Positions 5,186 to 57,185 of a stretch of 64,000 bases of DNA are shown piece after piece. The position numbers and the translations under genes were made by a program. The notes beneath the pieces were generated by a model. The model worked only from the letters and a program-made list of their open reading frames with translations, did not search any database and was not told the origin of the DNA. Numbering within the stretch: the first letter of the stretch is position 1; the number at the start of each line of letters is the position of its first letter. This stretch comes from Macrostomum lignano (Eukaryota), in assembly GCA_002269645.1 (NCBI GenBank), contig NIVC01001396.1:233100-297099 (forward strand), in the 5' to 3' direction.

Positions 5186-37943
<32,758 letters not shown>

Positions 37944-47025: not shown

Positions 47026-47559
47026 TGAAAATTCCAAAAACAACCACAAGTGCACCACAGCTCACAAAGGACACAAGTTGAGTGCAGAAACCGGCTTCCA
47101 AAAGGGATCGGATTAAAAAGCACTCAGCTGGAGGGGGGGTAATTCATTAGAATTGTAATCATAATTCGGAATCATGCGTGATAAATCATTCTTCAGCTCG
47201 ATGTGCGGAACGCATGGGCGGGGCACTTCTTGATCCTTATTGACCAAAATTCATCTCTCATTTTGAAGTAGCGCGCAAGCTGCTCCAGTGCTGATATGCT
47301 AATCGGCTTGGGGCTTGAGCTGTAAAAGTACATGCAAGCCCAGCAGATGCGATATTCTAGCGACCCTAGCAACCAGACGTGATACTATAGCGACCCTATA
47401 CAAATATCATATCTGTAAGATTTCACTCACCTTATCAACACAGAGATGAGTTACATGCAGTCTGGTGCTCCGTTGTTTAAAAACGAAAGATATGGTTTTA
47501 ACTTGAGTACTCATGTATGGCAAAACTGCACCAATGGCTGAGCCGAAGCAACTGGATTT

Positions 47560-48266
<707 letters not shown>

Positions 48267-50580: not shown

Positions 50581-50996
50581 TCCTTGAAGTCGAGACACAG
50601 GGTATTCATTCAATGAAAGAATCTTTGCTCACAAACCAAAAACAACAGAATCTTTGCTAAAGAAACAACAGAAACTTGATACAATTGCGCAGCTGAGGGT
50701 CATCCATTTATTCTTGGCAGTCATTTAGAATGATTAATAATGATTTCCCTAGGACAATGTGGAAATAGAAAAGCAGACATGAGGAAGCAACGCTCTATAG
50801 GGGCCTACATGCATATGATGTATGGGGATATAAAAAACACAGACTAAATCGACTCTTACTTAATCTTTTGTGTTCGACAAAGAGTAGTCAAAGATGAAAT
50901 TGATCAGAAATTGCTTTTTTTCCTAATTCCTTAGTGGGATCGGTTCACTGTTCATATCTAATATGACAGCAGTTATGTAATTTAAGGTCTAATTAT

Positions 50997-51285
50997 GCAC
51001 GCGAAGGTGTATTCAGCACGCCAGTGAAGTATGAGACAGACCAGGCCTAAGGGCTACGGTCTGCGATGCTTCACGCCTGCCCCTATATTCAGCAGGTCAA
51101 GGCTGGAGAGGGAGGTCTGCACCCGCTATTTGCCACTGGCAGCCGCAGACCCCCCCCCTCACGCTGTTTCACAAGTCGACCCAGGGTACTCGTCCCCGCG
51201 TGTGTTCAAGGCAGACCCTAGGGCTGCTGGACAGACTGGGCTCCGACGCTGGCGACCCATCCAGTGGCTTCGGCCGAATTTGGGT
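50997..51285 (+). ncRNA. Candidate HDV-like self-cleaving ribozyme at the retrotransposon 5' end
   Basis: P1 GCACGCG (50997-51003) with CGCGUGU (51197-51203), G1-U wobble; P2 ACCCA (51179-83) with UGGGU (51281-85); P3 GGG/CCC; L3 UACUCGU; P1.1 AC/GU; CGAA at 51275-78. Manual fold only. Confidence 0.72.
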
Positions 51286-51468
51286 ATGCGGGTCTGGCTT
51301 GCCAGCCTGCAGGCCGTGGTACTGCTTAACGTACCCCCTAATGCCTAAGGTGTTTGACCGTGCCGATGGGCTGGAAGGCCGGGGGGTTGTCCGGTCGCTA
51401 GCGGTCCTTTTCTTTTTCTTCTTTCCTCTTTCTTTTGTGACTCAGCTCACTCCTTCCCGCTTTCAGCT

Positions 51469-52933
51469 ATGGCGTCATCCGCCTCTTTAACCCCCGCTGA
51501 AGCCGGGGCCCCGGCAACTCCGGCCGGTGACTCTGGCACCAGCGCCGCCCCACCGGGGGCAGATGGGCTTGCCGCCGGCTCGGCTGGTGACATGCCCGCA
51601 CGCGCAACCGGGCCCTCCGCTGAAGCCCGACGCACCCGCAACCAACGCCGCAACGAGCGGCGACGGCGACTACGGGTACTGCGGGCCGGCCACCGGCGGA
51701 AGGGGAACCTAGGGAGGGCGAGGCTGCTGTTGGGCCGAAAGGAACCACAGCAACCCCTGCCCCCAGGATACAACCCCCGCTGGTGAGCCACCCAGTATAC
51801 CTGCTACAAGCGCGGCCGGGCCTTCGGGAACCGCCGCCACCAACTACGCCTCAAAGGTCAAGCTCCAACCGGCGGTCATCGTCTTCGGGGAAGAGCAGGA
51901 CCTCACGGCCGACGAGCTCGACAGTGCCTGGCGCACCATCGATGCTGCGCTCATCGACCAGCTCCTGGCGGGCCGCCCTGTGAGCGTGGTCAAGTCTGCC
52001 AAGACCGACGGCTGCATCTTCATCTGGTGCAGCTCGGAGGAGAGCAGCCGCAATCTACGCGAGCTTCTGCCAAAGCTGAACTGGCCCAAGAAGCTCGGCA
52101 AGCTCGTCTTCGCCAGCGAGGGCGAACGACAGAAGACCCAGCGCTTTCGCGTCTGGATCCCGGCCGGCAGTGCCATTAAGTCCGGAGATCAGCTTAGGCA
52201 AATATTGCTAAAGCTGCACCCCGACCTTAAGGTCAACGGGCTCCTACACCACGCCACTTCCCGCAAGGAGAAGGGGGCTACGGTGATCCTAGGGCTCTCT
52301 GATGACTGGGCTAAGCGCTTGCCGCCTAAGTCCACAATTCATATTGGTCTGACTCAGCTGACCATCCTCCGTTGCGAGGAGCGGAAAGCTGATGAAGCCA
52401 AGAATGCCAAAGCTTCCGAAACCGGAACTGGGGCCCAGGCTCCTCCGGCAAAGAAGCCGAGGCAAACGGCCGATCCTATGCCCGGTAAGGCAGTTCGCGC
52501 TGCTGAAACCGGAAATCGCAATCGCAGACCCGCCAGGAGCACCCGGAGGTCCGGCCTGATCCAGCGCGCGCTGGACCAGGCCAAGAACCTTCGTGCGCAT
52601 CGTGAGCGGGCCCGCGCTTCTCGCGCTCCACCCCAACAGCCAGAAGGCCAGACTCTAAGCGGGGAGGCTCCGACCGACTGGTTCGAGTCTGTGACTCACC
52701 AGGAGGCTGGCGCCACCCGCATCGACCTGACCGACGAGGCAGAGGGGACGGGCAGTGACAGCACCGAAGCACGCAGGAGAGGCGACGGTAACGTCCACGC
52801 TGGGCTCACGTCCGCGGAGGACTCCACAGCCACCCTAACTGCTGAGGACGCTGAAACTCCCATGGAGGTCTGCGGGTCACCCACCACTGAAAAGGAGGAG
52901 GATGACCTGCTCAACGATTCCCCAACTGCGTGA
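51469..52933 (+). CDS. Retrotransposon ORF1 (gag-like), split by a single +1 frameshift near 51754-51778
   Basis: ATG ORF 51469-51786 overlaps an open second frame 51713-52933. Removing one base from a C run (e.g. 51760-51764) gives 487 aa including NYASKVK...IVFGEEQDL...DGCIFIWCSSEES. No CCHC knuckle seen. Confidence 0.7.
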
Positions 52934-52935
52934 TA

Positions 52936-55900
52936 ATGATCAGCAACCAGGGAATCCATTGCCTGCAGATTAATCTGCAGCACTGCGTCGCAGCCTCGGT
53001 CAACCTTATGCGTTACGCCGAGCTCGACAAGCCGGGGCTCATCCTCGTCCAGGAACCCTGGACTCTCAGAGGTAAGCCTCAAAACGCCCCTGCTGGCTAC
53101 AATTGTTTTTATACTTACCCTCGCGAGGCCAACCAGCCTCCCAGAGCTTGCATCTTTGCGAGCAAAACGCTCAGTGCGTGGCTCAGATCGGACCTGTCCA
53201 ACAGGGACATCTGCGTCATCCAATCCGAGGACCTTCTTCCTGGGAAGACCACCCTCATTGCCTCGGTTTACCTACCAGGCGATGCTGCGGTCGTCCCCAG
53301 AGCCCTCGCTACGCTGGTAGAGCTCTGCTCTGCCAAAAACTACGAGCTCATGGTTGCCGGCGACATCAACGCCCACCACACTCACTGGGGCAGCACTGGC
53401 ATTAATCAGAGAGGCGAAGACCTCCTAGCCTACGTTGCCTCTACGACCCTCGAGTTCTGCAACTCTGGGTCCACCCCTACCTTTGACAACGGACGGTGGT
53501 CGGAGGTGATCGACGCTACGCTCGCAACGCCCAGACTCTACCAGAGTATTGGGGCGTGGCGGGTGCTTCCAGTGTCCTCACTATCGGATCACAAGTTCAT
53601 CTCCTTCAACCTAATGGCCGCGCGTAGCGCAACTCGTGTTATGTGGAGACGGAACGCCAGAAATACGGATTGGGAAACCTTCGGGCTCGCCCTGAAGGAA
53701 TTCCATCGGTCTCCTGGCCAACCATCCACGATCACGTCGTGCCGAGAGGCGGATGAGTGCGCGACTGTTTTGACAGAGACGCTAACCGCCGCCTTTGAGG
53801 CGTCCTGCCCTTTAAAAGCCTATAAAGGGAAAAAATCGGCGCCGTGGTGGAATCCCGAGCTCGGCAACCTCCGTCGCAGGGCTAAGAGACTCCACCGCAG
53901 AGCAACTAAAACTAAGAGCCCTGCAGACCAAACCGCCTATCATGAAGCAATTCATGAGTTTAAAAGGCAGGTTAGGAATGCAAAGGCTCAAAAATGGCGA
54001 CAATACTGTGAGGAGCTAGAGGGCTCACGCCCCACCTCCAGAGTTGTGAAAGCGCTCACGCTGGACAAAATGTCTAAGCTCTCCTCGGTCAAACGCACCG
54101 ACGGTACGTCCACGGACAACCCAGGGGAAACGCTTGATGTAATGCTCACTGCGTTTTTCCCTAACGAGCCAGCTAACCAGACCACTCCGGATCACTCGGA
54201 GGGAGGTCACGCGCTGGCTGCATCTATCATCACGGAGGACCGCATTGTGAGAGCGGCAAATTCCTTCAAGCCTTTCAAAGCCCCAGGACCCGACGGCATT
54301 GTACCGGCCCTTCTAAGAGAGGCGGTTAAATGCCCAGGCTTCCTGCGCAAACTTTGCAGCCTTCTTCGGGCATGCATCACGCTTGGTTATGTCCCGCAGG
54401 CATGGACCGAGGCAAAGGTGATCTTTATCCCTAAGCCAGGCCGCCCGGACTACCATTCTATCAAATCCTTCAGACCGATCAGCTTGACCTCCTCCCTGGT
54501 CAAGCTGATGGAGAGACTGGTGCTTTGGCGCCTTCTCTCTGTTGAGCTGAAGAACAAACCTCTCAGCGAGAACCAGCACGCTTTTCGGGCGGGTCGCTCC
54601 ACTGAAAGCGCGCTGCACGTCCTGGTCGATAAACTCGAGAAGGCCGTGCTTGGTAGTGGCTTTGCTCTGGGGATCTTCCTGGACATCATTGGCGCCTTCG
54701 ATAACGTCCTCTTTGAGGCGTTCCGAAGAGCTCTTTGTGAGAGGCTAACGCACTCACATCTCACCAGATGGATCATGTACATGATCAGCCATCGCACGGC
54801 CACCGCCAGTCTGCTGGGCTACCAGAGGACGGTCCCCGTCTGCAAAGGTAGCCCGCAAGGTGGGGTGCTGTCTCCAGTTCTCTGGAATATGGTCATCGAT
54901 GAGCTCCTCCGGGATGTTCGGCCTGACCCCATTCTGAAAGTTGGATATGCGGACGATGTCACCGCGGTGGCATCTGGTCCGTCCCCTGATACCCTCAGGG
55001 ACCTTCTTCAGAACTTCATCTACGCTGCTGAGCAATGGGCGGACCGCTGTGGTTTAAGGCTCTCTGAGACTAAGACCGCAGCGATCATGTTCACCAGCAG
55101 GACCAAGTGGCAGATTCGGCCGCTCACGCTTTACGGAAGGGAAATCCCCTTCTGCAAGCAGACTAAATGTCTGGGTATTACCCTGGACCACAGGCTGAAC
55201 TGGTCTCCCCACGTTCAAACAAAAGCCAAAAAGGCCTTCGCAGTCCTCGCGCAATTGCGCAGGGCCGTCGGCACCACCTGGGGGCTCACCCCCAAGCGCC
55301 TCTGGTGGATCTACACTGCAATGGTTAGGCCCGCTATCTCGTATGGCGGCCTGATCTGGGCTAGCGCCCTGCAGATAAAGACCTGTCTAGAGGCTCTCAG
55401 GAGAGCGCAAGGGCGCGCTTGTCGCACGATCATGAGCGCCCCTCCGTCTGCTCCTTACGATGGCCTCAACGCCTTCCTCAACATTCCTCCGCTGGACATC
55501 TTTGTCCGCAGGGAAGCGGCTAAGACTGCCCGCCGTCTAGCTGACGCTGGCATTCGAATCCAGCCCCATAGGGCCATGGCTAAGCGCAAGCTTCTGCCCC
55601 ACGCTGACCTCTGCCTCAAGGACTTGAGAGACAGCGGCGGGCTCCACGTCCTATCTGACGGCGAACCCCGCACTCTCAACCTCTTTCAGCGCTACAAGGT
55701 CACCATCCCCTCTAGGGATGCTGCCAATGACCACTGGAATTTCCAGGAGGTCCATTGCTACACGGACGGATCCATCAAAGACGGTCGCGCCGGCTTTGGG
55801 GTCTGCATCATCATCAACGGCCGCGTAATTGCCACGCATGCCCAGCACACTGGTAGACTCTCCACAGTCTTCCAGAACGAAGTCCTTGCCATCAGCTCTT

Positions 55901-56640
55901 GCGCTGCAGAGCTAAACGCCAAGGTTACGAGAGGAAAGACTATTGTCATCCACTCCGACAGCCAAGCGGCCTTACAGGCCCTTTGCCACACCACAACGAA
56001 CTCCCGGACAGTCGCCGACTGCGCCCGGCAGCTCAACCTCCTGGCCAGAAGCAATACTGTCAGGCTGAAGTGGATCCCAGGGCACGCAGGGTTTCCGGGG
56101 AACGAGCTGGCAGACACCCTCGCCAAGAGGGGCGGCTCTGGCTCTTTTTTCGGCCCTGCCCCCCTGGTCCCTATGCCCTTGACAGTCATCAATCGTCAGA
56201 TCGACGACTGGGCTGACTCCCTCCACAGGGACAGATGGGCGGGCACCCAAAACTGCCGGCAATCTCGTGCCGCGGTTCCTTGCCCGTCTCACAGGCTCAG
56301 AAACATCCTTCTGAACCAGAATCGGAAGGATATTCGAGCCCTTGTCATGACCCTTACCGGCCATGGCTACCTCGCCAGGCACTGCTTCCTCCGAGGCGAC
56401 CTCGAGAGCGAAATTTGCCCCTTTTGCGAGTGCGACAATGAAGATGCTCAGCACTTTGTCTGTCACTGCCCTTTCTTTAACAGAGACCGGCTACGCTACC
56501 TCGGGCCGAACCCGTCCATTGACGAGGTTTGCCAGCCCGACAGCATCCCACGGCTCATCCAGTTCCTTCGGGCGACTAGACGAGCCAGTTTCTTCCCAAC
56601 GGAAGATCACGCTGCAGGACGGACCGGCGGACCACCCTGA
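52936..56640 (+). CDS. Retrotransposon ORF2: AP endonuclease, reverse transcriptase, RNase H, CCHC finger (1234 aa)
   Basis: QINLQHC, LVQEPW, AGDINAHH, SDH (APE); KAPGPDG, FRPISL, PQGGVLSP, YADD (RT); YTDGS, SDSQAAL, WIPGHAGFPGNELAD (RNase H); C-x2-C-x8-H-x4-C. No stops or frameshifts. ATG at 52936 (the track starts at an upstream GTG). Confidence 0.95.
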   Translation: MISNQGIHCLQINLQHCVAASVNLMRYAELDKPGLILVQEPWTLRGKPQNAPAGYNCFYTYPREANQPPRACIFASKTLSAWLRSDLSNRDICVIQSEDLLPGKTTLIASVYLPGDAAVVPRALATLVELCSAKNYELMVAGDINAHHTHWGSTGINQRGEDLLAYVASTTLEFCNSGSTPTFDNGRWSEVIDATLATPRLYQSIGAWRVLPVSSLSDHKFISFNLMAARSATRVMWRRNARNTDWETFGLALKEFHRSPGQPSTITSCREADECATVLTETLTAAFEASCPLKAYKGKKSAPWWNPELGNLRRRAKRLHRRATKTKSPADQTAYHEAIHEFKRQVRNAKAQKWRQYCEELEGSRPTSRVVKALTLDKMSKLSSVKRTDGTSTDNPGETLDVMLTAFFPNEPANQTTPDHSEGGHALAASIITEDRIVRAANSFKPFKAPGPDGIVPALLREAVKCPGFLRKLCSLLRACITLGYVPQAWTEAKVIFIPKPGRPDYHSIKSFRPISLTSSLVKLMERLVLWRLLSVELKNKPLSENQHAFRAGRSTESALHVLVDKLEKAVLGSGFALGIFLDIIGAFDNVLFEAFRRALCERLTHSHLTRWIMYMISHRTATASLLGYQRTVPVCKGSPQGGVLSPVLWNMVIDELLRDVRPDPILKVGYADDVTAVASGPSPDTLRDLLQNFIYAAEQWADRCGLRLSETKTAAIMFTSRTKWQIRPLTLYGREIPFCKQTKCLGITLDHRLNWSPHVQTKAKKAFAVLAQLRRAVGTTWGLTPKRLWWIYTAMVRPAISYGGLIWASALQIKTCLEALRRAQGRACRTIMSAPPSAPYDGLNAFLNIPPLDIFVRREAAKTARRLADAGIRIQPHRAMAKRKLLPHADLCLKDLRDSGGLHVLSDGEPRTLNLFQRYKVTIPSRDAANDHWNFQEVHCYTDGSIKDGRAGFGVCIIINGRVIATHAQHTGRLSTVFQNEVLAISSCAAELNAKVTRGKTIVIHSDSQAALQALCHTTTNSRTVADCARQLNLLARSNTVRLKWIPGHAGFPGNELADTLAKRGGSGSFFGPAPLVPMPLTVINRQIDDWADSLHRDRWAGTQNCRQSRAAVPCPSHRLRNILLNQNRKDIRALVMTLTGHGYLARHCFLRGDLESEICPFCECDNEDAQHFVCHCPFFNRDRLRYLGPNPSIDEVCQPDSIPRLIQFLRATRRASFFPTEDHAAGRTGGPP

Positions 56641-56884
56641 CCGGCCCCACGCCTCTGCCTGTCTGCGGGCCTTCAGGGGCTAGCGGAATGGGCGACCCTC
56701 GCCTCCCCGCTGTGTCTACGGACCACCCTGCAGCTAAGTCAAGTCAAGGTCTAATTATAGCTGACATTGCTTTGCTCTTTGAGCGAGCTTTGTTCAAGGC
56801 TATTCTATTGCTATTCTGAATTAGCAGTGGGGACTGGCATTATCTCCGCTCCTAGCTCTCTGTATGCATTGTTCATGTACTGTC

Positions 56885-57185
56885 CTCTCCCCTCTCTTCT
56901 CTCAGCTCCCCCATCTTCTCCCTCCCCTCTCCTCTCTCCATCTCTTCTCTATTCTCTCCTCTCCCCTCTCCACTCTCCGCTCTCCACTCTCTCTTCTCCG
57001 CTCTCTCCTCTCCGCTCTCCCCTCTCCACTCTCCCCATCCTCTCTCTTCCTTCTCCTCTCTTCCATCTTCTCTCCTCCATCTCCTCTCCCCATCTTATCT
57101 CTCCCCCTTCTTCTTCCTCATGTCCTCTCTCCCCTCTCTTCTCCTCCCTATCTTCTTCACTCCCCCCTCCTCTCCCCCTTTCACC
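56885..57185. repeat. CT-rich low-complexity tract
   Basis: Polypyrimidine composition. Confidence 0.85.

What the first reader, a model, noticed from the sequence alone, without database searches (positions are those of the whole stretch)
50997..51285. HDV-like self-cleaving ribozyme fold whose G1 is exactly the first base of the retrotransposon
Seen: the TSD ends at 50996 and the next 7 nt, GCACGCG, pair 7/7 (G-U first pair) with CGCGUGU at 51197-51203. These follow GGG-UACUCGU-CCC (P3/L3) and precede GU. L3 carries AC where HDV has CC and the junction carries GU where HDV has GG, so P1.1 is kept by compensatory change. CGAA (candidate catalytic C51275) precedes the P2 3' strand UGGGU. The ~175-nt J1/2 folds into its own hairpins (GUGAAG 51024-29 with CUUCAC 51069-74; CAGACC with GGUCUG; GGUCUGC 51114-20 with GCAGACC 51145-51). 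Established: HDV-like ribozymes process 5' ends of R2, RTE, SART and Baggins/LOA elements. Inference: this copy cuts itself out of read-through transcripts; I am not aware of a described flatworm LOA example. Imperfections: P2 is only 5 bp, two extra U lie in J4/2, and a competing GGC-UUCG-GCC hairpin could sequester C51275.
Basis: partly seen in the sequence, partly recalled or inferred. Interest (0 to 1): 0.88.

Follow-up and report, generated by a model that had tools for sequence, protein, structure and literature searches.

The report
Self-cutting RNA at retrotransposon start
The first ~245 bases of a full-length jumping gene in the flatworm Macrostomum lignano fold like the known HDV-type self-cutting RNA, and distant relatives keep the same fold; this is a well-supported new example of a known trick for trimming a retrotransposon's RNA to its exact start, not a new kind of thing.

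Summary
A 5,749-bp non-LTR retrotransposon (APE-RT-RNase H) lies at 50997-56745 between perfect 13-bp target-site duplications. Its first 7 nt pair 7/7 with 51197-51203, directly after a GGG-UACUCGU-CCC hairpin, and a 2-bp P1.1 follows. A core anchored like this at a fixed start occurs in 0.08-0.24% of controls.

The same layout sits at the 5' boundary of four other elements in three deep lineages (ORF2 identity 29-61%): L001, L009/L064, L016 and L023. Both-sided compensatory changes occur in P1, P3, P1.1, P2 and P4. L3 keeps CGU and an AA follows P1.1. A family-level HDV-like 5' ribozyme is therefore very likely, although cleavage is untested.

The closest relative cannot form it, and those bases make a local hairpin of their own. 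Comparison favours P4 51210-28, J4/2 51229-36 with C51232, and a 4-bp P2 (51180-83/51237-40).

No Rfam HDV model matches. A covariance model built from distant relatives finds L001 but not this copy. ORF1 is frameshifted, so this copy may be inactive. The LOA assignment was not tested. Verdict: new member of a known kind, moderate interest.

The parts
50984..50996 (.). Left target-site duplication, AAGGTCTAATTAT
   Evidence: Identical 13-mer at 56746-56758
50997..51003 (+). P1 5' strand GCACGCG. G50997 is the first base of the element and the predicted cleavage-site nucleotide (cut between 50996 and 50997)
   Evidence: 7/7 pairs with 51197-51203. P1 covaries in L001, L009, L016 and L023
51004..51179 (+). 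J1/2 peripheral domain. It holds an imperfect closing helix 51007-17/51163-72, hairpin 51024-74 (inner stem 51037-42/51058-63, conserved loop AGGCCUAAGGGCUA) and hairpin 51114-51
   Evidence: RNAalifold with L001 gives 35 pairs, 6 of them with both-sided changes. Closing helices were read by eye in L001 (11-19/153-161), L009 and L016; for L009/L016 also
51180..51183 (+).
   Evidence: Possible partners are UGGG 51237-40 or UGGGU 51281-85
51184..51196 (+). P3 (GGG/CCC) with the 7-nt loop L3, UACUCGU
   Evidence: All three P3 pairs covary (GGG/CCC versus ACC/GGU). L3 positions 5-7 are CGU in all five lineages
51197..51203 (+). P1 3' strand CGCGUGU
51204..51205 (+). P1.1 3' nucleotides GU, pairing with C51189 and A51188 of L3
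   Evidence: Both pairs change on both sides among the relatives
51206..51209 (+). J1.1/4, UCAA. The AA is invariant in all five lineages
51210..51228 (+). P4 hairpin in model B: GGCAG(A)CC-CUAG-GGCUGCU
   Evidence: -8.9 to -9.4 kcal/mol, no better than shuffles. It is the positional counterpart of the strong P4 hairpins of L001, L009 and L016
51229..51236 (+). J4/2 in model B, GGACAGAC. C51232 is the favoured catalytic candidate
   Evidence: Sequence reading. UGGAC occupies the same place before the P2 3' strand in L023. Relatives L001, L009 and L016 have G-C-U-R-N here
51237..51240 (+). P2 3' strand in model B, UGGG (4 bp with 51180-83)
   Evidence: MAFFT aligns it with the L001 P2 3' strand UCUGAG 232-237
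51252..51285 (+). Downstream stem-loop ACCCA...GGC-UUCG-GCC...UGGGU.
   Evidence: Local MFE -18.3 kcal/mol, 57% of the ensemble. An ACCC/GGGU pairing is also possible in L001
51469..52933 (+). ORF1, broken in this copy: ATG 51469 to a stop at 51786 in frame 1, then continuing in frame 2 to 52933
   Evidence: The L001 ORF1 aligns from 51794
52930..56640 (+). ORF2, intact, 1236 aa: AP endonuclease, reverse transcriptase, RNase H and a C-terminal Cys/His motif
   Evidence: Pfam PF03372/PF14529, PF00078, PF00075. 98% identical to Macrostomum lignano UniRef entries
56641..56745 (+). 3' UTR ending in AAGTCAAGTC
   Evidence: The motifs AGCGGAATGGGCG and CCCTGCAGCTAAGTCAA are shared with L001
56746..56758 (.). 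Right target-site duplication

Best explanation
The 5' end of this Macrostomum lignano non-LTR retrotransposon encodes an HDV-like (nested double-pseudoknot) self-cleaving ribozyme, inherited within a broad clade of APE-RT-RNase H elements.

Proposed fold, in order:
- The first 7 nt of the element RNA (50997-51003) pair with 51197-51203.
- A ~175-nt J1/2 domain folds on its own and brings P1 and P2 together.
- P3/L3 (51184-96) and the 2-bp P1.1 build the active site.
- A J4/2 cytosine cuts the phosphodiester between 50996 and 50997.

Proposed consequence: an element RNA embedded in any read-through transcript is trimmed to its exact first base. Complete reverse transcription of that RNA gives insertions that begin at G50997 right after the TSD.

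Shown: the pairings, the element boundaries and the comparative conservation. Inferred: catalysis, the identity of the catalytic C, co-transcriptional action, and whether this frameshifted copy is still active.
For: 1. Boundaries. A perfect 13-bp TSD places the element start at G50997.
2. Core. All core pairs are present. An anchored core is rare by chance: 47/20,000 shuffles and 51/63,440 window positions.
3. L001 (61% ORF2 identity). This contig begins at its nt 1 with GCCUGC, which pairs with GCAGGC directly after GGG-UCUCCGU-CCC, followed by AG-GCAA.
4. L009/L064 and L016. They carry the same layout at an AT-rich to GC-rich boundary, with 10-12-bp P2, clean P4 hairpins and J4/2 of GCUGA and GCUAAAC.
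5. L023. It has the same core with a G-U first pair.
6. Covariation. In a hand-made structural alignment of the first four lineages (window, L001, L009, L016), both-sided changes occur in 4/7 P1, 3/3 P3, 2/2 P1.1, 5/5 P4 and 6/6 P2 pairs. L3 CGU and the AA after P1.1 are invariant there and also in L023.
7. Specificity. A family descriptor hits only these five lineages plus about 2 likely false sites on the sense strand and 1 on the antisense strand, in about 540 kb per strand. All five lie 1.8-2.4 kb upstream of ORF2. The five fall into three deep lineages.
8. Covariance models. One built from L016 finds L009 (E 5e-7). One built from L016+L009 finds L001:170-238 with the model-B layout (E 0.009).
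9. Literature. Published R2 ribozymes have P1 of 6-7 bp, variable P4, P1 to P1' spacing of 23 to >700 nt, and a conserved L3 G paired to an L3 U (PMC3774820). J1/2 helices activate large HDV-like ribozymes (PMC4908430).
Against: - No Rfam HDV-family model matches, even at E<=10 on sub-regions.
- The covariance model from distant relatives gives only a 2.9-bit local hit in the window.
- In this copy no cytosine directly follows P4 (GGAC instead of the relatives' GC), and P2 is only 4 bp in model B.
- The P4 hairpin is no more stable than shuffled sequence.
- Unconstrained and partly constrained MFE folds prefer other pairings.
- ORF1 is frameshifted, so the copy may be dead.
- The structural alignment was made by hand because MAFFT mis-registers these short blocks. 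P2 and P4 were chosen per sequence by complementarity.
- No other M. lignano copy could be retrieved.
- Starting at G1 is also what an internal promoter would give.
- No cleavage data exist.
Confidence: 0.72

Rival explanations
1. Reader's exact fold (model A). It is the same ribozyme, but P4 is the whole 51206-51274 domain, C51275 in CGAAUU is the catalytic base, and P2 is ACCCA 51179-83 with UGGGU 51281-85.
For: - It has a 5-bp P2 flush with P3.
- With the core fixed, the nested part is more stable than model B: -34.7 versus -29.6 kcal/mol.
- GCCGAAUU resembles the J4/2 of L016, GCUAAAC.
- L023 shows that a ~110-nt P4 domain exists in the family.
- From my memory, not tested: the human CPEB3 ribozyme also has CGAA in J4/2.
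Against: - L001 has no P2 partner at the homologous place.
- UGGGU pairs locally with ACCCA 51252-56, and the inner C-UUCG-G hairpin takes up C51275.
- In the model-A MFE, C51275 pairs with G51210.
- The covariance model gives no alignment spanning 51179-51285.
- Model-B elements are transcribed first.
Confidence: 0.2
2. A conserved structured 5' UTR without catalysis. The pseudoknotted fold serves as an internal promoter, a translation-initiation element or an ORF2-protein binding site. In this reading the 5' end at G50997 is set by transcription initiation.
For: - In R2 and L1Tc the same 5' region also acts as a protein-binding site, an IRES-like element or a promoter (PMC6765202, PMC3383444).
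- This copy lacks a C in the canonical first J4/2 position.
- Much conserved structure lies outside the core.
Against: The conserved and covarying parts are exactly those that define the HDV fold:
- P1 anchored at nt 1;
- P1.1;
- the 3-bp P3 with a 7-nt L3;
- G-C at the start of J4/2 in three relatives.

A promoter acting as DNA would not need P1 or P1.1 compensation.
Confidence: 0.1
3. Chance complementarity in a GC-rich 5' UTR.
For: Loose un-anchored HDV-like cores occur about 6 times in 128 kb of this window. There is no Rfam hit.
Against: The anchored probability is 0.08-0.24%. The finding is repeated independently in four other elements with different helix sequences.
Confidence: 0.01

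Closest known systems
R2 retrotransposon HDV-like ribozyme (Eickbush & Eickbush 2010; Eickbush et al. 2013, PMC3774820)
   Same: - A 5'-terminal double-pseudoknot ribozyme that frees the element RNA from a co-transcript.
- P1 of 6-7 bp directly after P3/L3.
- A long, variable J1/2 (23 to >700 nt) and a variable P4.
- A conserved L3 G and U.
   Different: - R2 has a restriction-like endonuclease, a single ORF and a fixed 28S rDNA target, and often cleaves upstream in the rRNA.
- This element has APE + RT + RNase H and two ORFs, inserts in a non-rDNA site with a 13-bp TSD, and is predicted to cut at its own first base.
L1Tc ribozyme (L1TcRz) of Trypanosoma cruzi and the ingi clade (PMC3185411, PMC4035085)
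   Same: - An APE-RT-RNase H LINE flanked by TSDs.
- An HDV-like ribozyme starting at +1 of the element.
- Downstream element sequence can interfere with the active fold. A comparable downstream helix is seen here.
   Different: - L1TcRz is compact (77 nt) and doubles as the Pr77 promoter.
- Here the fold spans about 245 nt with a 175-nt J1/2 domain.
- There is no sequence similarity, and promoter activity was not tested.
Baggins and RTE HDV-like ribozymes (Ruminski et al. 2011, as summarised in PMC6765202)
   Same: HDV-like ribozymes at the 5' ends of randomly inserting non-LTR elements that rely on read-through transcription.
   Different: I could not read the primary paper. Whether this element belongs to the same clade as Baggins (LOA) was not tested.
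drz-Agam-2 type large HDV-like ribozymes with a P1.2 peripheral domain (PMC4908430)
   Same: A structured J1/2 with a helix that closes the domain next to P1 and P2. Such a helix is seen in the window, L001, L009 and L016.
   Different: The sequence and host differ. In the window the closing helix is imperfect (U-U mismatches).
Twister-variant ribozymes at the 5' end of Perere-3 in Schistosoma mansoni (PMC8501958)
   Same: A flatworm non-LTR retrotransposon with a 5' self-cleaving ribozyme whose cleavage site abuts the TSD.
   Different: - The ribozyme class differs (twister, not HDV-like).
- There the TSD supplies one strand of P1. Here both P1 strands are internal to the element.

Membership tests
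HDV-like self-cleaving ribozymes | Nested double-pseudoknot topology, in the order P1, J1/2, P2, P3, L3, P3', P1', P1.1, P4, J4/2, P2' | tested here: met
   All helices can be drawn in this order. P1, P3, P1.1, P4 and P2 keep pairing through both-sided changes in four lineages, and L023 repeats the same core
HDV-like self-cleaving ribozymes | Cleavage site is the first nucleotide of P1, a G, usually in a G-U wobble | tested here: met
   The G50997-U51203 wobble is the first P1 pair. L023 also has G-U, while L001, L009 and L016 have G-C. Cleavage itself was not tested
HDV-like self-cleaving ribozymes | 3-bp P3 closed by a 7-nt L3 that carries the conserved U and G and the P1.1 partners | tested here: met
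   GGG-UACUCGU-CCC. U is at L3 position 1 and G at position 6. P1.1 is C51189-G51204 and A51188-U51205. The role of the L3 G and U is described in PMC3774820
HDV-like self-cleaving ribozymes | Catalytic cytosine at the first position of J4/2, directly after P4 (PMC10879173) | tested here: inconclusive
   There are three candidate registers: C51232 (model B, preceded by GGA), C51275 (model A, paired in the MFE) and C51224 (if GCUGC is J4/2, leaving a 3-bp P2). Relatives L001, L009 and L016 have G-C right after P4
HDV-like self-cleaving ribozymes | P2 of about 5 bp or more next to P3 | tested here: inconclusive
   4 bp in model B and 5 bp in model A. Relatives have 6, 7 and 10-12 bp. In R2 one third of elements have P2 mismatches (PMC3774820)
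HDV-like self-cleaving ribozymes | Match to curated covariance models (Rfam HDV, CPEB3 and drz families) | tested here: not met
   No HDV-family hit at the gathering threshold or at E<=10, on the window, on sub-regions or on L001. The value of this test is limited: the models do not encode the pseudoknots or a 175-nt J1/2, and the family has only about five conserved nucleotides (PMC4870747)
HDV-like self-cleaving ribozymes | [quoted passage not shown] | not testable with these tools
   Needs bench work
Ribozyme-terminated non-LTR retrotransposons (R2, L1Tc, Baggins, RTE type) | Ribozyme G1 coincides with the 5' end of full-length insertions and is conserved across the element family | tested here: met
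   The TSD boundary is at 50996/50997. The L001 contig starts at G1. L009 and L016 show compositional boundaries at G1. All five cores lie 1.8-2.4 kb upstream of ORF2
   Pfam hits. This order is shared with the I, R1, Tad1 and ingi clades, so it is not diagnostic
   No reference set was available. The named hits are uninformative (X-element and Metarhizium RT at 24-27%)

The most novel reading that the evidence does not exclude
The 5' leader is a regulated, multi-state RNA and not just a cutter.
- In both the window and L001, a downstream segment pairs back onto the 3' part of the ribozyme: 51260-69 onto 51222-31 in the window, and 259-269 onto 232-242 in L001.
- After, or instead of, co-transcriptional cleavage the leader would then refold into a different conserved structure. 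That structure could be an IRES-like or ORF-protein-binding form.
- A second GCACGC at 51016-21 offers an alternative P1.
- Together these would give a switch that couples 5'-end processing to translation or packaging across a previously unrecognised, widespread aquatic-invertebrate LINE clade.
Probability: 0.15. Interest if true: 0.6.

Novelty: new member of a known kind. Interest (0 to 1): 0.45.

Why it matters
HDV-like ribozymes are an established way for promoter-less LINEs to define their RNA 5' end (R2, L1Tc, Baggins, RTE). This finding adds several things.

- A flatworm example. The literature searches returned no relevant paper that links Macrostomum with ribozymes, and the only paper found combining HDV-like ribozymes with Platyhelminthes is an R2 survey that I did not open. 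The described flatworm case in Schistosoma uses twister variants.
- Breadth. The ribozyme is shared by at least three deep lineages of an RNase H-bearing LINE clade that is common in environmental metagenomes.
- Practical use. It fixes the true 5' end of full-length copies for annotation. It offers natural sequence variants for studying tolerance of the fold: G-C versus G-U at the cleavage site, three P1.1 solutions, and large J1/2 and P4 domains. It also gives a testable processing signal in M. lignano, a species used as a laboratory model.

It does not change how we think these elements work.

Tried and rejected
- Rfam at the gathering threshold and at E<=10, on the window, on 50800-51500, on 51170-51295 and on L001 1-300. 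Only chance miRNA, CRISPR or lncRNA hits appeared.
- Other copies in the window: none.
- Exact look-up of the window's ORF2: not on record.
- ORF1 profile search: only L001 itself and one UniRef model without DNA.
- P0002, the second-closest relative: DNA unavailable and 5'-truncated.
- Collection scans for the conserved J1/2 loop motif: 0 hits in metagenomes. Two hits in viral contigs (L006, L007) were not examined and I presume they are chance.
- Relatives L002-L005: either 5'-truncated or without a recognisable core.
- Looser descriptors were swamped by false positives, with more hits on the reverse strand than on the forward strand.
- L046:858-924 (E 0.07 with model R1) lies inside ORF1 coding sequence and was rejected.
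- L066, L012 and L056 look partly similar. The L066 5' end resembles that of L001, but no canonical P2 or P1.1 could be drawn, so they were left out.
- MAFFT could not hold the short structural blocks in register. The covariation table was therefore computed on a hand alignment, and the count of structure pairs was not used.
- A TSD for L016 could not be established.
- I ran no further search on a spurious 5'-UTR ORF, because M. lignano assemblies appear to be absent from that collection.

Full report
**What is there**

The window comes from Macrostomum lignano: ORF2 is 98% identical to UniRef entries of that species. A GC-rich insertion lies at 50997-56745, flanked by a perfect 13-bp direct repeat AAGGTCTAATTAT at 50984-96 and 56746-58.

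- ORF2 (52930-56640) is intact at 1236 aa and has AP-endonuclease, reverse-transcriptase and RNase H domains.
- ORF1 is split by one frameshift near 51786.
- The 3' UTR ends in AAGTCAAGTC.
- It is the only copy in the window.
- It sits in a region made almost entirely of unrelated tandem arrays.

**Check of the observation**

- P1 is 50997-51003 with 51197-51203, 7/7 pairs, G-U first.
- P3/L3 is GGG-UACUCGU-CCC.
- P1.1 is C51189-G51204 and A51188-U51205.
- The proposed P2 is ACCCA/UGGGU, and CGAA lies at 51275-78.
- The J1/2 hairpins are also present.

A loose, un-anchored HDV-like core is not rare, about six in 128 kb of this window. A core whose P1 starts at one prescribed base is rare: 47 of 20,000 dinucleotide shuffles and 51 of 63,440 window positions. 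Here the prescribed base is fixed independently by the TSD.

**Relatives**

No second M. lignano copy could be fetched.

The closest relative with DNA is L001, a Logan contig with 61% ORF2 identity.
- It begins at its nucleotide 1 with GCCUGC.
- That hexamer pairs with GCAGGC, which lies directly after GGG-UCUCCGU-CCC and is followed by AG and GCAA.

A protein-guided scan of metagenome contigs returned 80 loci with ORF2 relatives at 28-37% identity. Three independent ones have the same layout at the point where AT-rich flank turns into GC-rich element:
- L009 (identical to L064): P1 GGGGGGG/CCCCCCC, P3/L3 ACC-UCUACGU-GGU, P1.1 AG, then UAA, P4 CUGCAG-GAGA-CUGCAG, J4/2 GCUGA, and a 12-bp P2.
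- L016: P1 GGGGGG/CCCUCC, P3/L3 ACC-GCCUCGU-GGU, P1.1 GG, then GCAA, a 9-bp P4, J4/2 GCUAAAC, and a 10-12-bp P2.
- L023: P1 GGCUGC/GCAGCU with a G-U first pair, P3/L3 ACC-UCCUCGU-GGU, P1.1 GG, then AAAU, and a 7-bp P2 after a 111-nt P4 domain.

ORF2 identities define three deep lineages: window with L001 (61%), L009 with L016 (55%), and L023 alone. All other pairs are 29-35% identical.

A descriptor distilled from these cases requires a 3-bp Watson-Crick P3, L3 of the form NNNNCGU, P1 of at least 6 bp, two Watson-Crick P1.1 pairs, and AA within 4 nt.
- It hits only the five lineages plus two sites inside ORF2 on the sense strand, and one site on the antisense strand, in about 540 kb per strand.
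- All five true hits lie 1.8-2.4 kb upstream of ORF2.

**Covariation**

I made a hand structural alignment of the window, L001, L009 and L016. Both-sided changes that keep pairing occur in 4/7 P1, 3/3 P3, 2/2 P1.1, 5/5 P4 and 6/6 P2 pairs.
- P1, P3 and P1.1 are positionally fixed. They are contiguous with L3, and P1 is anchored at nt 1, so those counts do not depend on alignment choices.
- P2 and P4 were located per sequence by complementarity, so those counts are biased towards pairing.
- P1.1 occurs as AC/GU, CU/AG and CC/GG.
- Among unpaired positions, L3 positions 5-7 are CGU and an AA follows P1.1 in all five lineages.
- G-C opens J4/2 in L001, L009 and L016.

Covariance-model searches agree in part.
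- A model built from L016 alone finds L009 (E 5e-7).
- A model built from L016+L009 picks L001:170-238 as the best hit in its leader, with exactly this layout (12.4 bits, E 0.009).
- The same model gives only a 2.9-bit local hit at 51180-51241 in the window.

**J1/2**

The first is kept in L001 with compensatory changes.

In addition, a helix closes the J1/2 domain a few bases after P1 and a few before P2. I read these helices by eye, and RNAalifold supports the L009/L016 one.
- L001: 11-19 with 153-161, 9 bp.
- L009 and L016: CCAUG/CAUGG and CCGUGG/CCACGG.
- Window: 51007-17 with 51163-72, imperfect.

This matches the P1.2 'pinch' domain that activates large HDV-like ribozymes (PMC4908430). 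The 175-nt length is within the published range for R2, where P1 and P1' lie 23 to >700 nt apart (PMC3774820).

**The 3' half**

- It has no counterpart in L001.
- Its UGGGU pairs locally with ACCCA 51252-56, around a C-UUCG-G hairpin that includes C51275.
- In the constrained MFE, C51275 pairs with G51210.

Model B has P4 at 51210-28, J4/2 GGACAGAC at 51229-36 and P2 as CCCA/UGGG at 51180-83/51237-40.
- It is the positional equivalent of the fold in L001, L009 and L016.
- It is transcribed first.
- It shares UGGAC before the P2 3' strand with L023.

Model B also has weaknesses.
- P2 is only 4 bp.
- Three bases lie between P4 and the candidate C51232.
- P4 is no more stable than shuffled sequence.
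- The nested part is 5 kcal/mol less stable than in model A.

A third register reads GCUGC 51223-27 as J4/2, as in L001, but leaves a 3-bp P2.

My split is about 50% model B, 25% model A, and 25% another register or a decayed copy.

**Mechanism**

This part is inferred from established knowledge of R2, L1Tc, Baggins and RTE ribozymes (PMC3774820, PMC3185411, PMC6765202).
- The element is transcribed as part of a longer RNA, or from its own promoter.
- The leader folds co-transcriptionally.
- The J4/2 cytosine and a bound Mg2+ catalyse attack of the 2'-OH of nucleotide 50996. This leaves a 5'-OH on G50997.
- The processed RNA is translated and copied by target-primed reverse transcription.
- Complete copying gives insertions that start at G1 next to the TSD, as seen here.

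None of the catalytic steps was or could be tested here.

**Comparison and novelty**

This is the known R2 / L1Tc / Baggins / RTE strategy. No Rfam model recognises it. That is expected for a family with about five conserved nucleotides (PMC4870747) and a 175-nt insertion, but it remains a failed membership test.

- The LOA label was not tested. The domain order is shared with several clades.
- The literature searches returned no relevant paper that links Macrostomum with ribozymes, and the only paper combining HDV-like ribozymes with Platyhelminthes is an R2 survey that I did not open.
- The described flatworm case uses twister variants (PMC8501958).

Verdict: a new member of a known kind, with good comparative support for the core and an unresolved 3' half. 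Interest is moderate.

Noticed in passing
window 1-64000: Apart from the retrotransposon, the window is a mosaic of more than 40 different short-period tandem arrays. Periods are 4-63 nt and each array is 0.1-1.6 kb, separated by a few hundred bases. Examples are (ACAGTG)n at 26890-28532, a 14-mer at 13084-14506 and a 22-mer at 9123-10239.
   Followed up: partly
window 29523-30101 and 47559-48266: (GATA)n and (TATC)n arrays form a roughly 400-nt inverted repeat about 18 kb apart. The repeat finder reported it as arms that are 94-96% complementary.
   Followed up: no
window 51016-51021: A second GCACGC lies 19 nt inside the element. It could form an alternative 6-bp P1 with 51198-51203. This recalls the 5'-extension and duplication model proposed for R2 ribozymes.
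   Followed up: partly
window 51469-51990: ORF1 changes from frame 1 to frame 2 around 51710-51790 (stop at 51784-86), while ORF2 is intact. This could be a real frameshift or a sequencing error in a GC-rich stretch.
   Followed up: partly
L001 269-275 and L016 745-751: The 7-mer GCUAAAC is the J4/2 of L016. It also occurs in L001 about 40 nt downstream of L001's own J4/2, and it aligns with the window's GCCGAAUU (51273-80). This is unexplained. It might be a remnant of an older register of the ribozyme.
   Followed up: partly
window 51222-51231 / 51260-51269; L001 232-242 / 259-269: In both elements a downstream segment can pair back onto the 3' part of the ribozyme: onto the P4 3' strand in the window, and onto the P2 3' strand in L001 (an 11-bp helix within a fold of z-score -4.1). 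This may be a post-cleavage refolding or an attenuator, as reported for L1Tc.
   Followed up: partly
L001 1 and 5950-6492: The Logan contig starts exactly at the predicted cleavage base, yet it runs about 540 nt past the element's 3' end into flanking sequence with antisense ORFs. If the run is RNA-seq, this is what a ribozyme-processed read-through transcript would look like. The type of run could not be checked.
   Followed up: no
window 51045-51058; L001 46-59: The loop motif AGGCCYAAGGGCUA in the first J1/2 hairpin is nearly identical between elements with 61% ORF2 identity. It was not found in metagenome contigs (0 hits). Its function is unknown.
   Followed up: partly
window 56641-56745; L001 5850-5962; L016 about 6060-6100: The window and L001 share the 3' UTR motifs AGCGGAAUGGGCG and CCCUGCAGCUAAGUCAA. 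The tails are short tandem repeats, not poly(A): AAGTC in the window and GAAGA in L016.
   Followed up: no
L066 3586-3640: A distant relative starts, after an AT-rich flank, with CCTCTGCGAATGGCAGG, which resembles the L001 start GCCTGCAATGGCAGG. ACC-UUGCCGU-GGU-GCAGGGG follows only 11 nt later. It may be a compact variant with C at +1, but no canonical P2 or P1.1 could be drawn.
   Followed up: partly
window 56860-57180: A CT-rich low-complexity tract (CCTCTCC-like units) begins about 100 bp after the right TSD. Similar CT-rich arrays recur at 13084-14506, 16107-16705 and 24653-25648.
   Followed up: no
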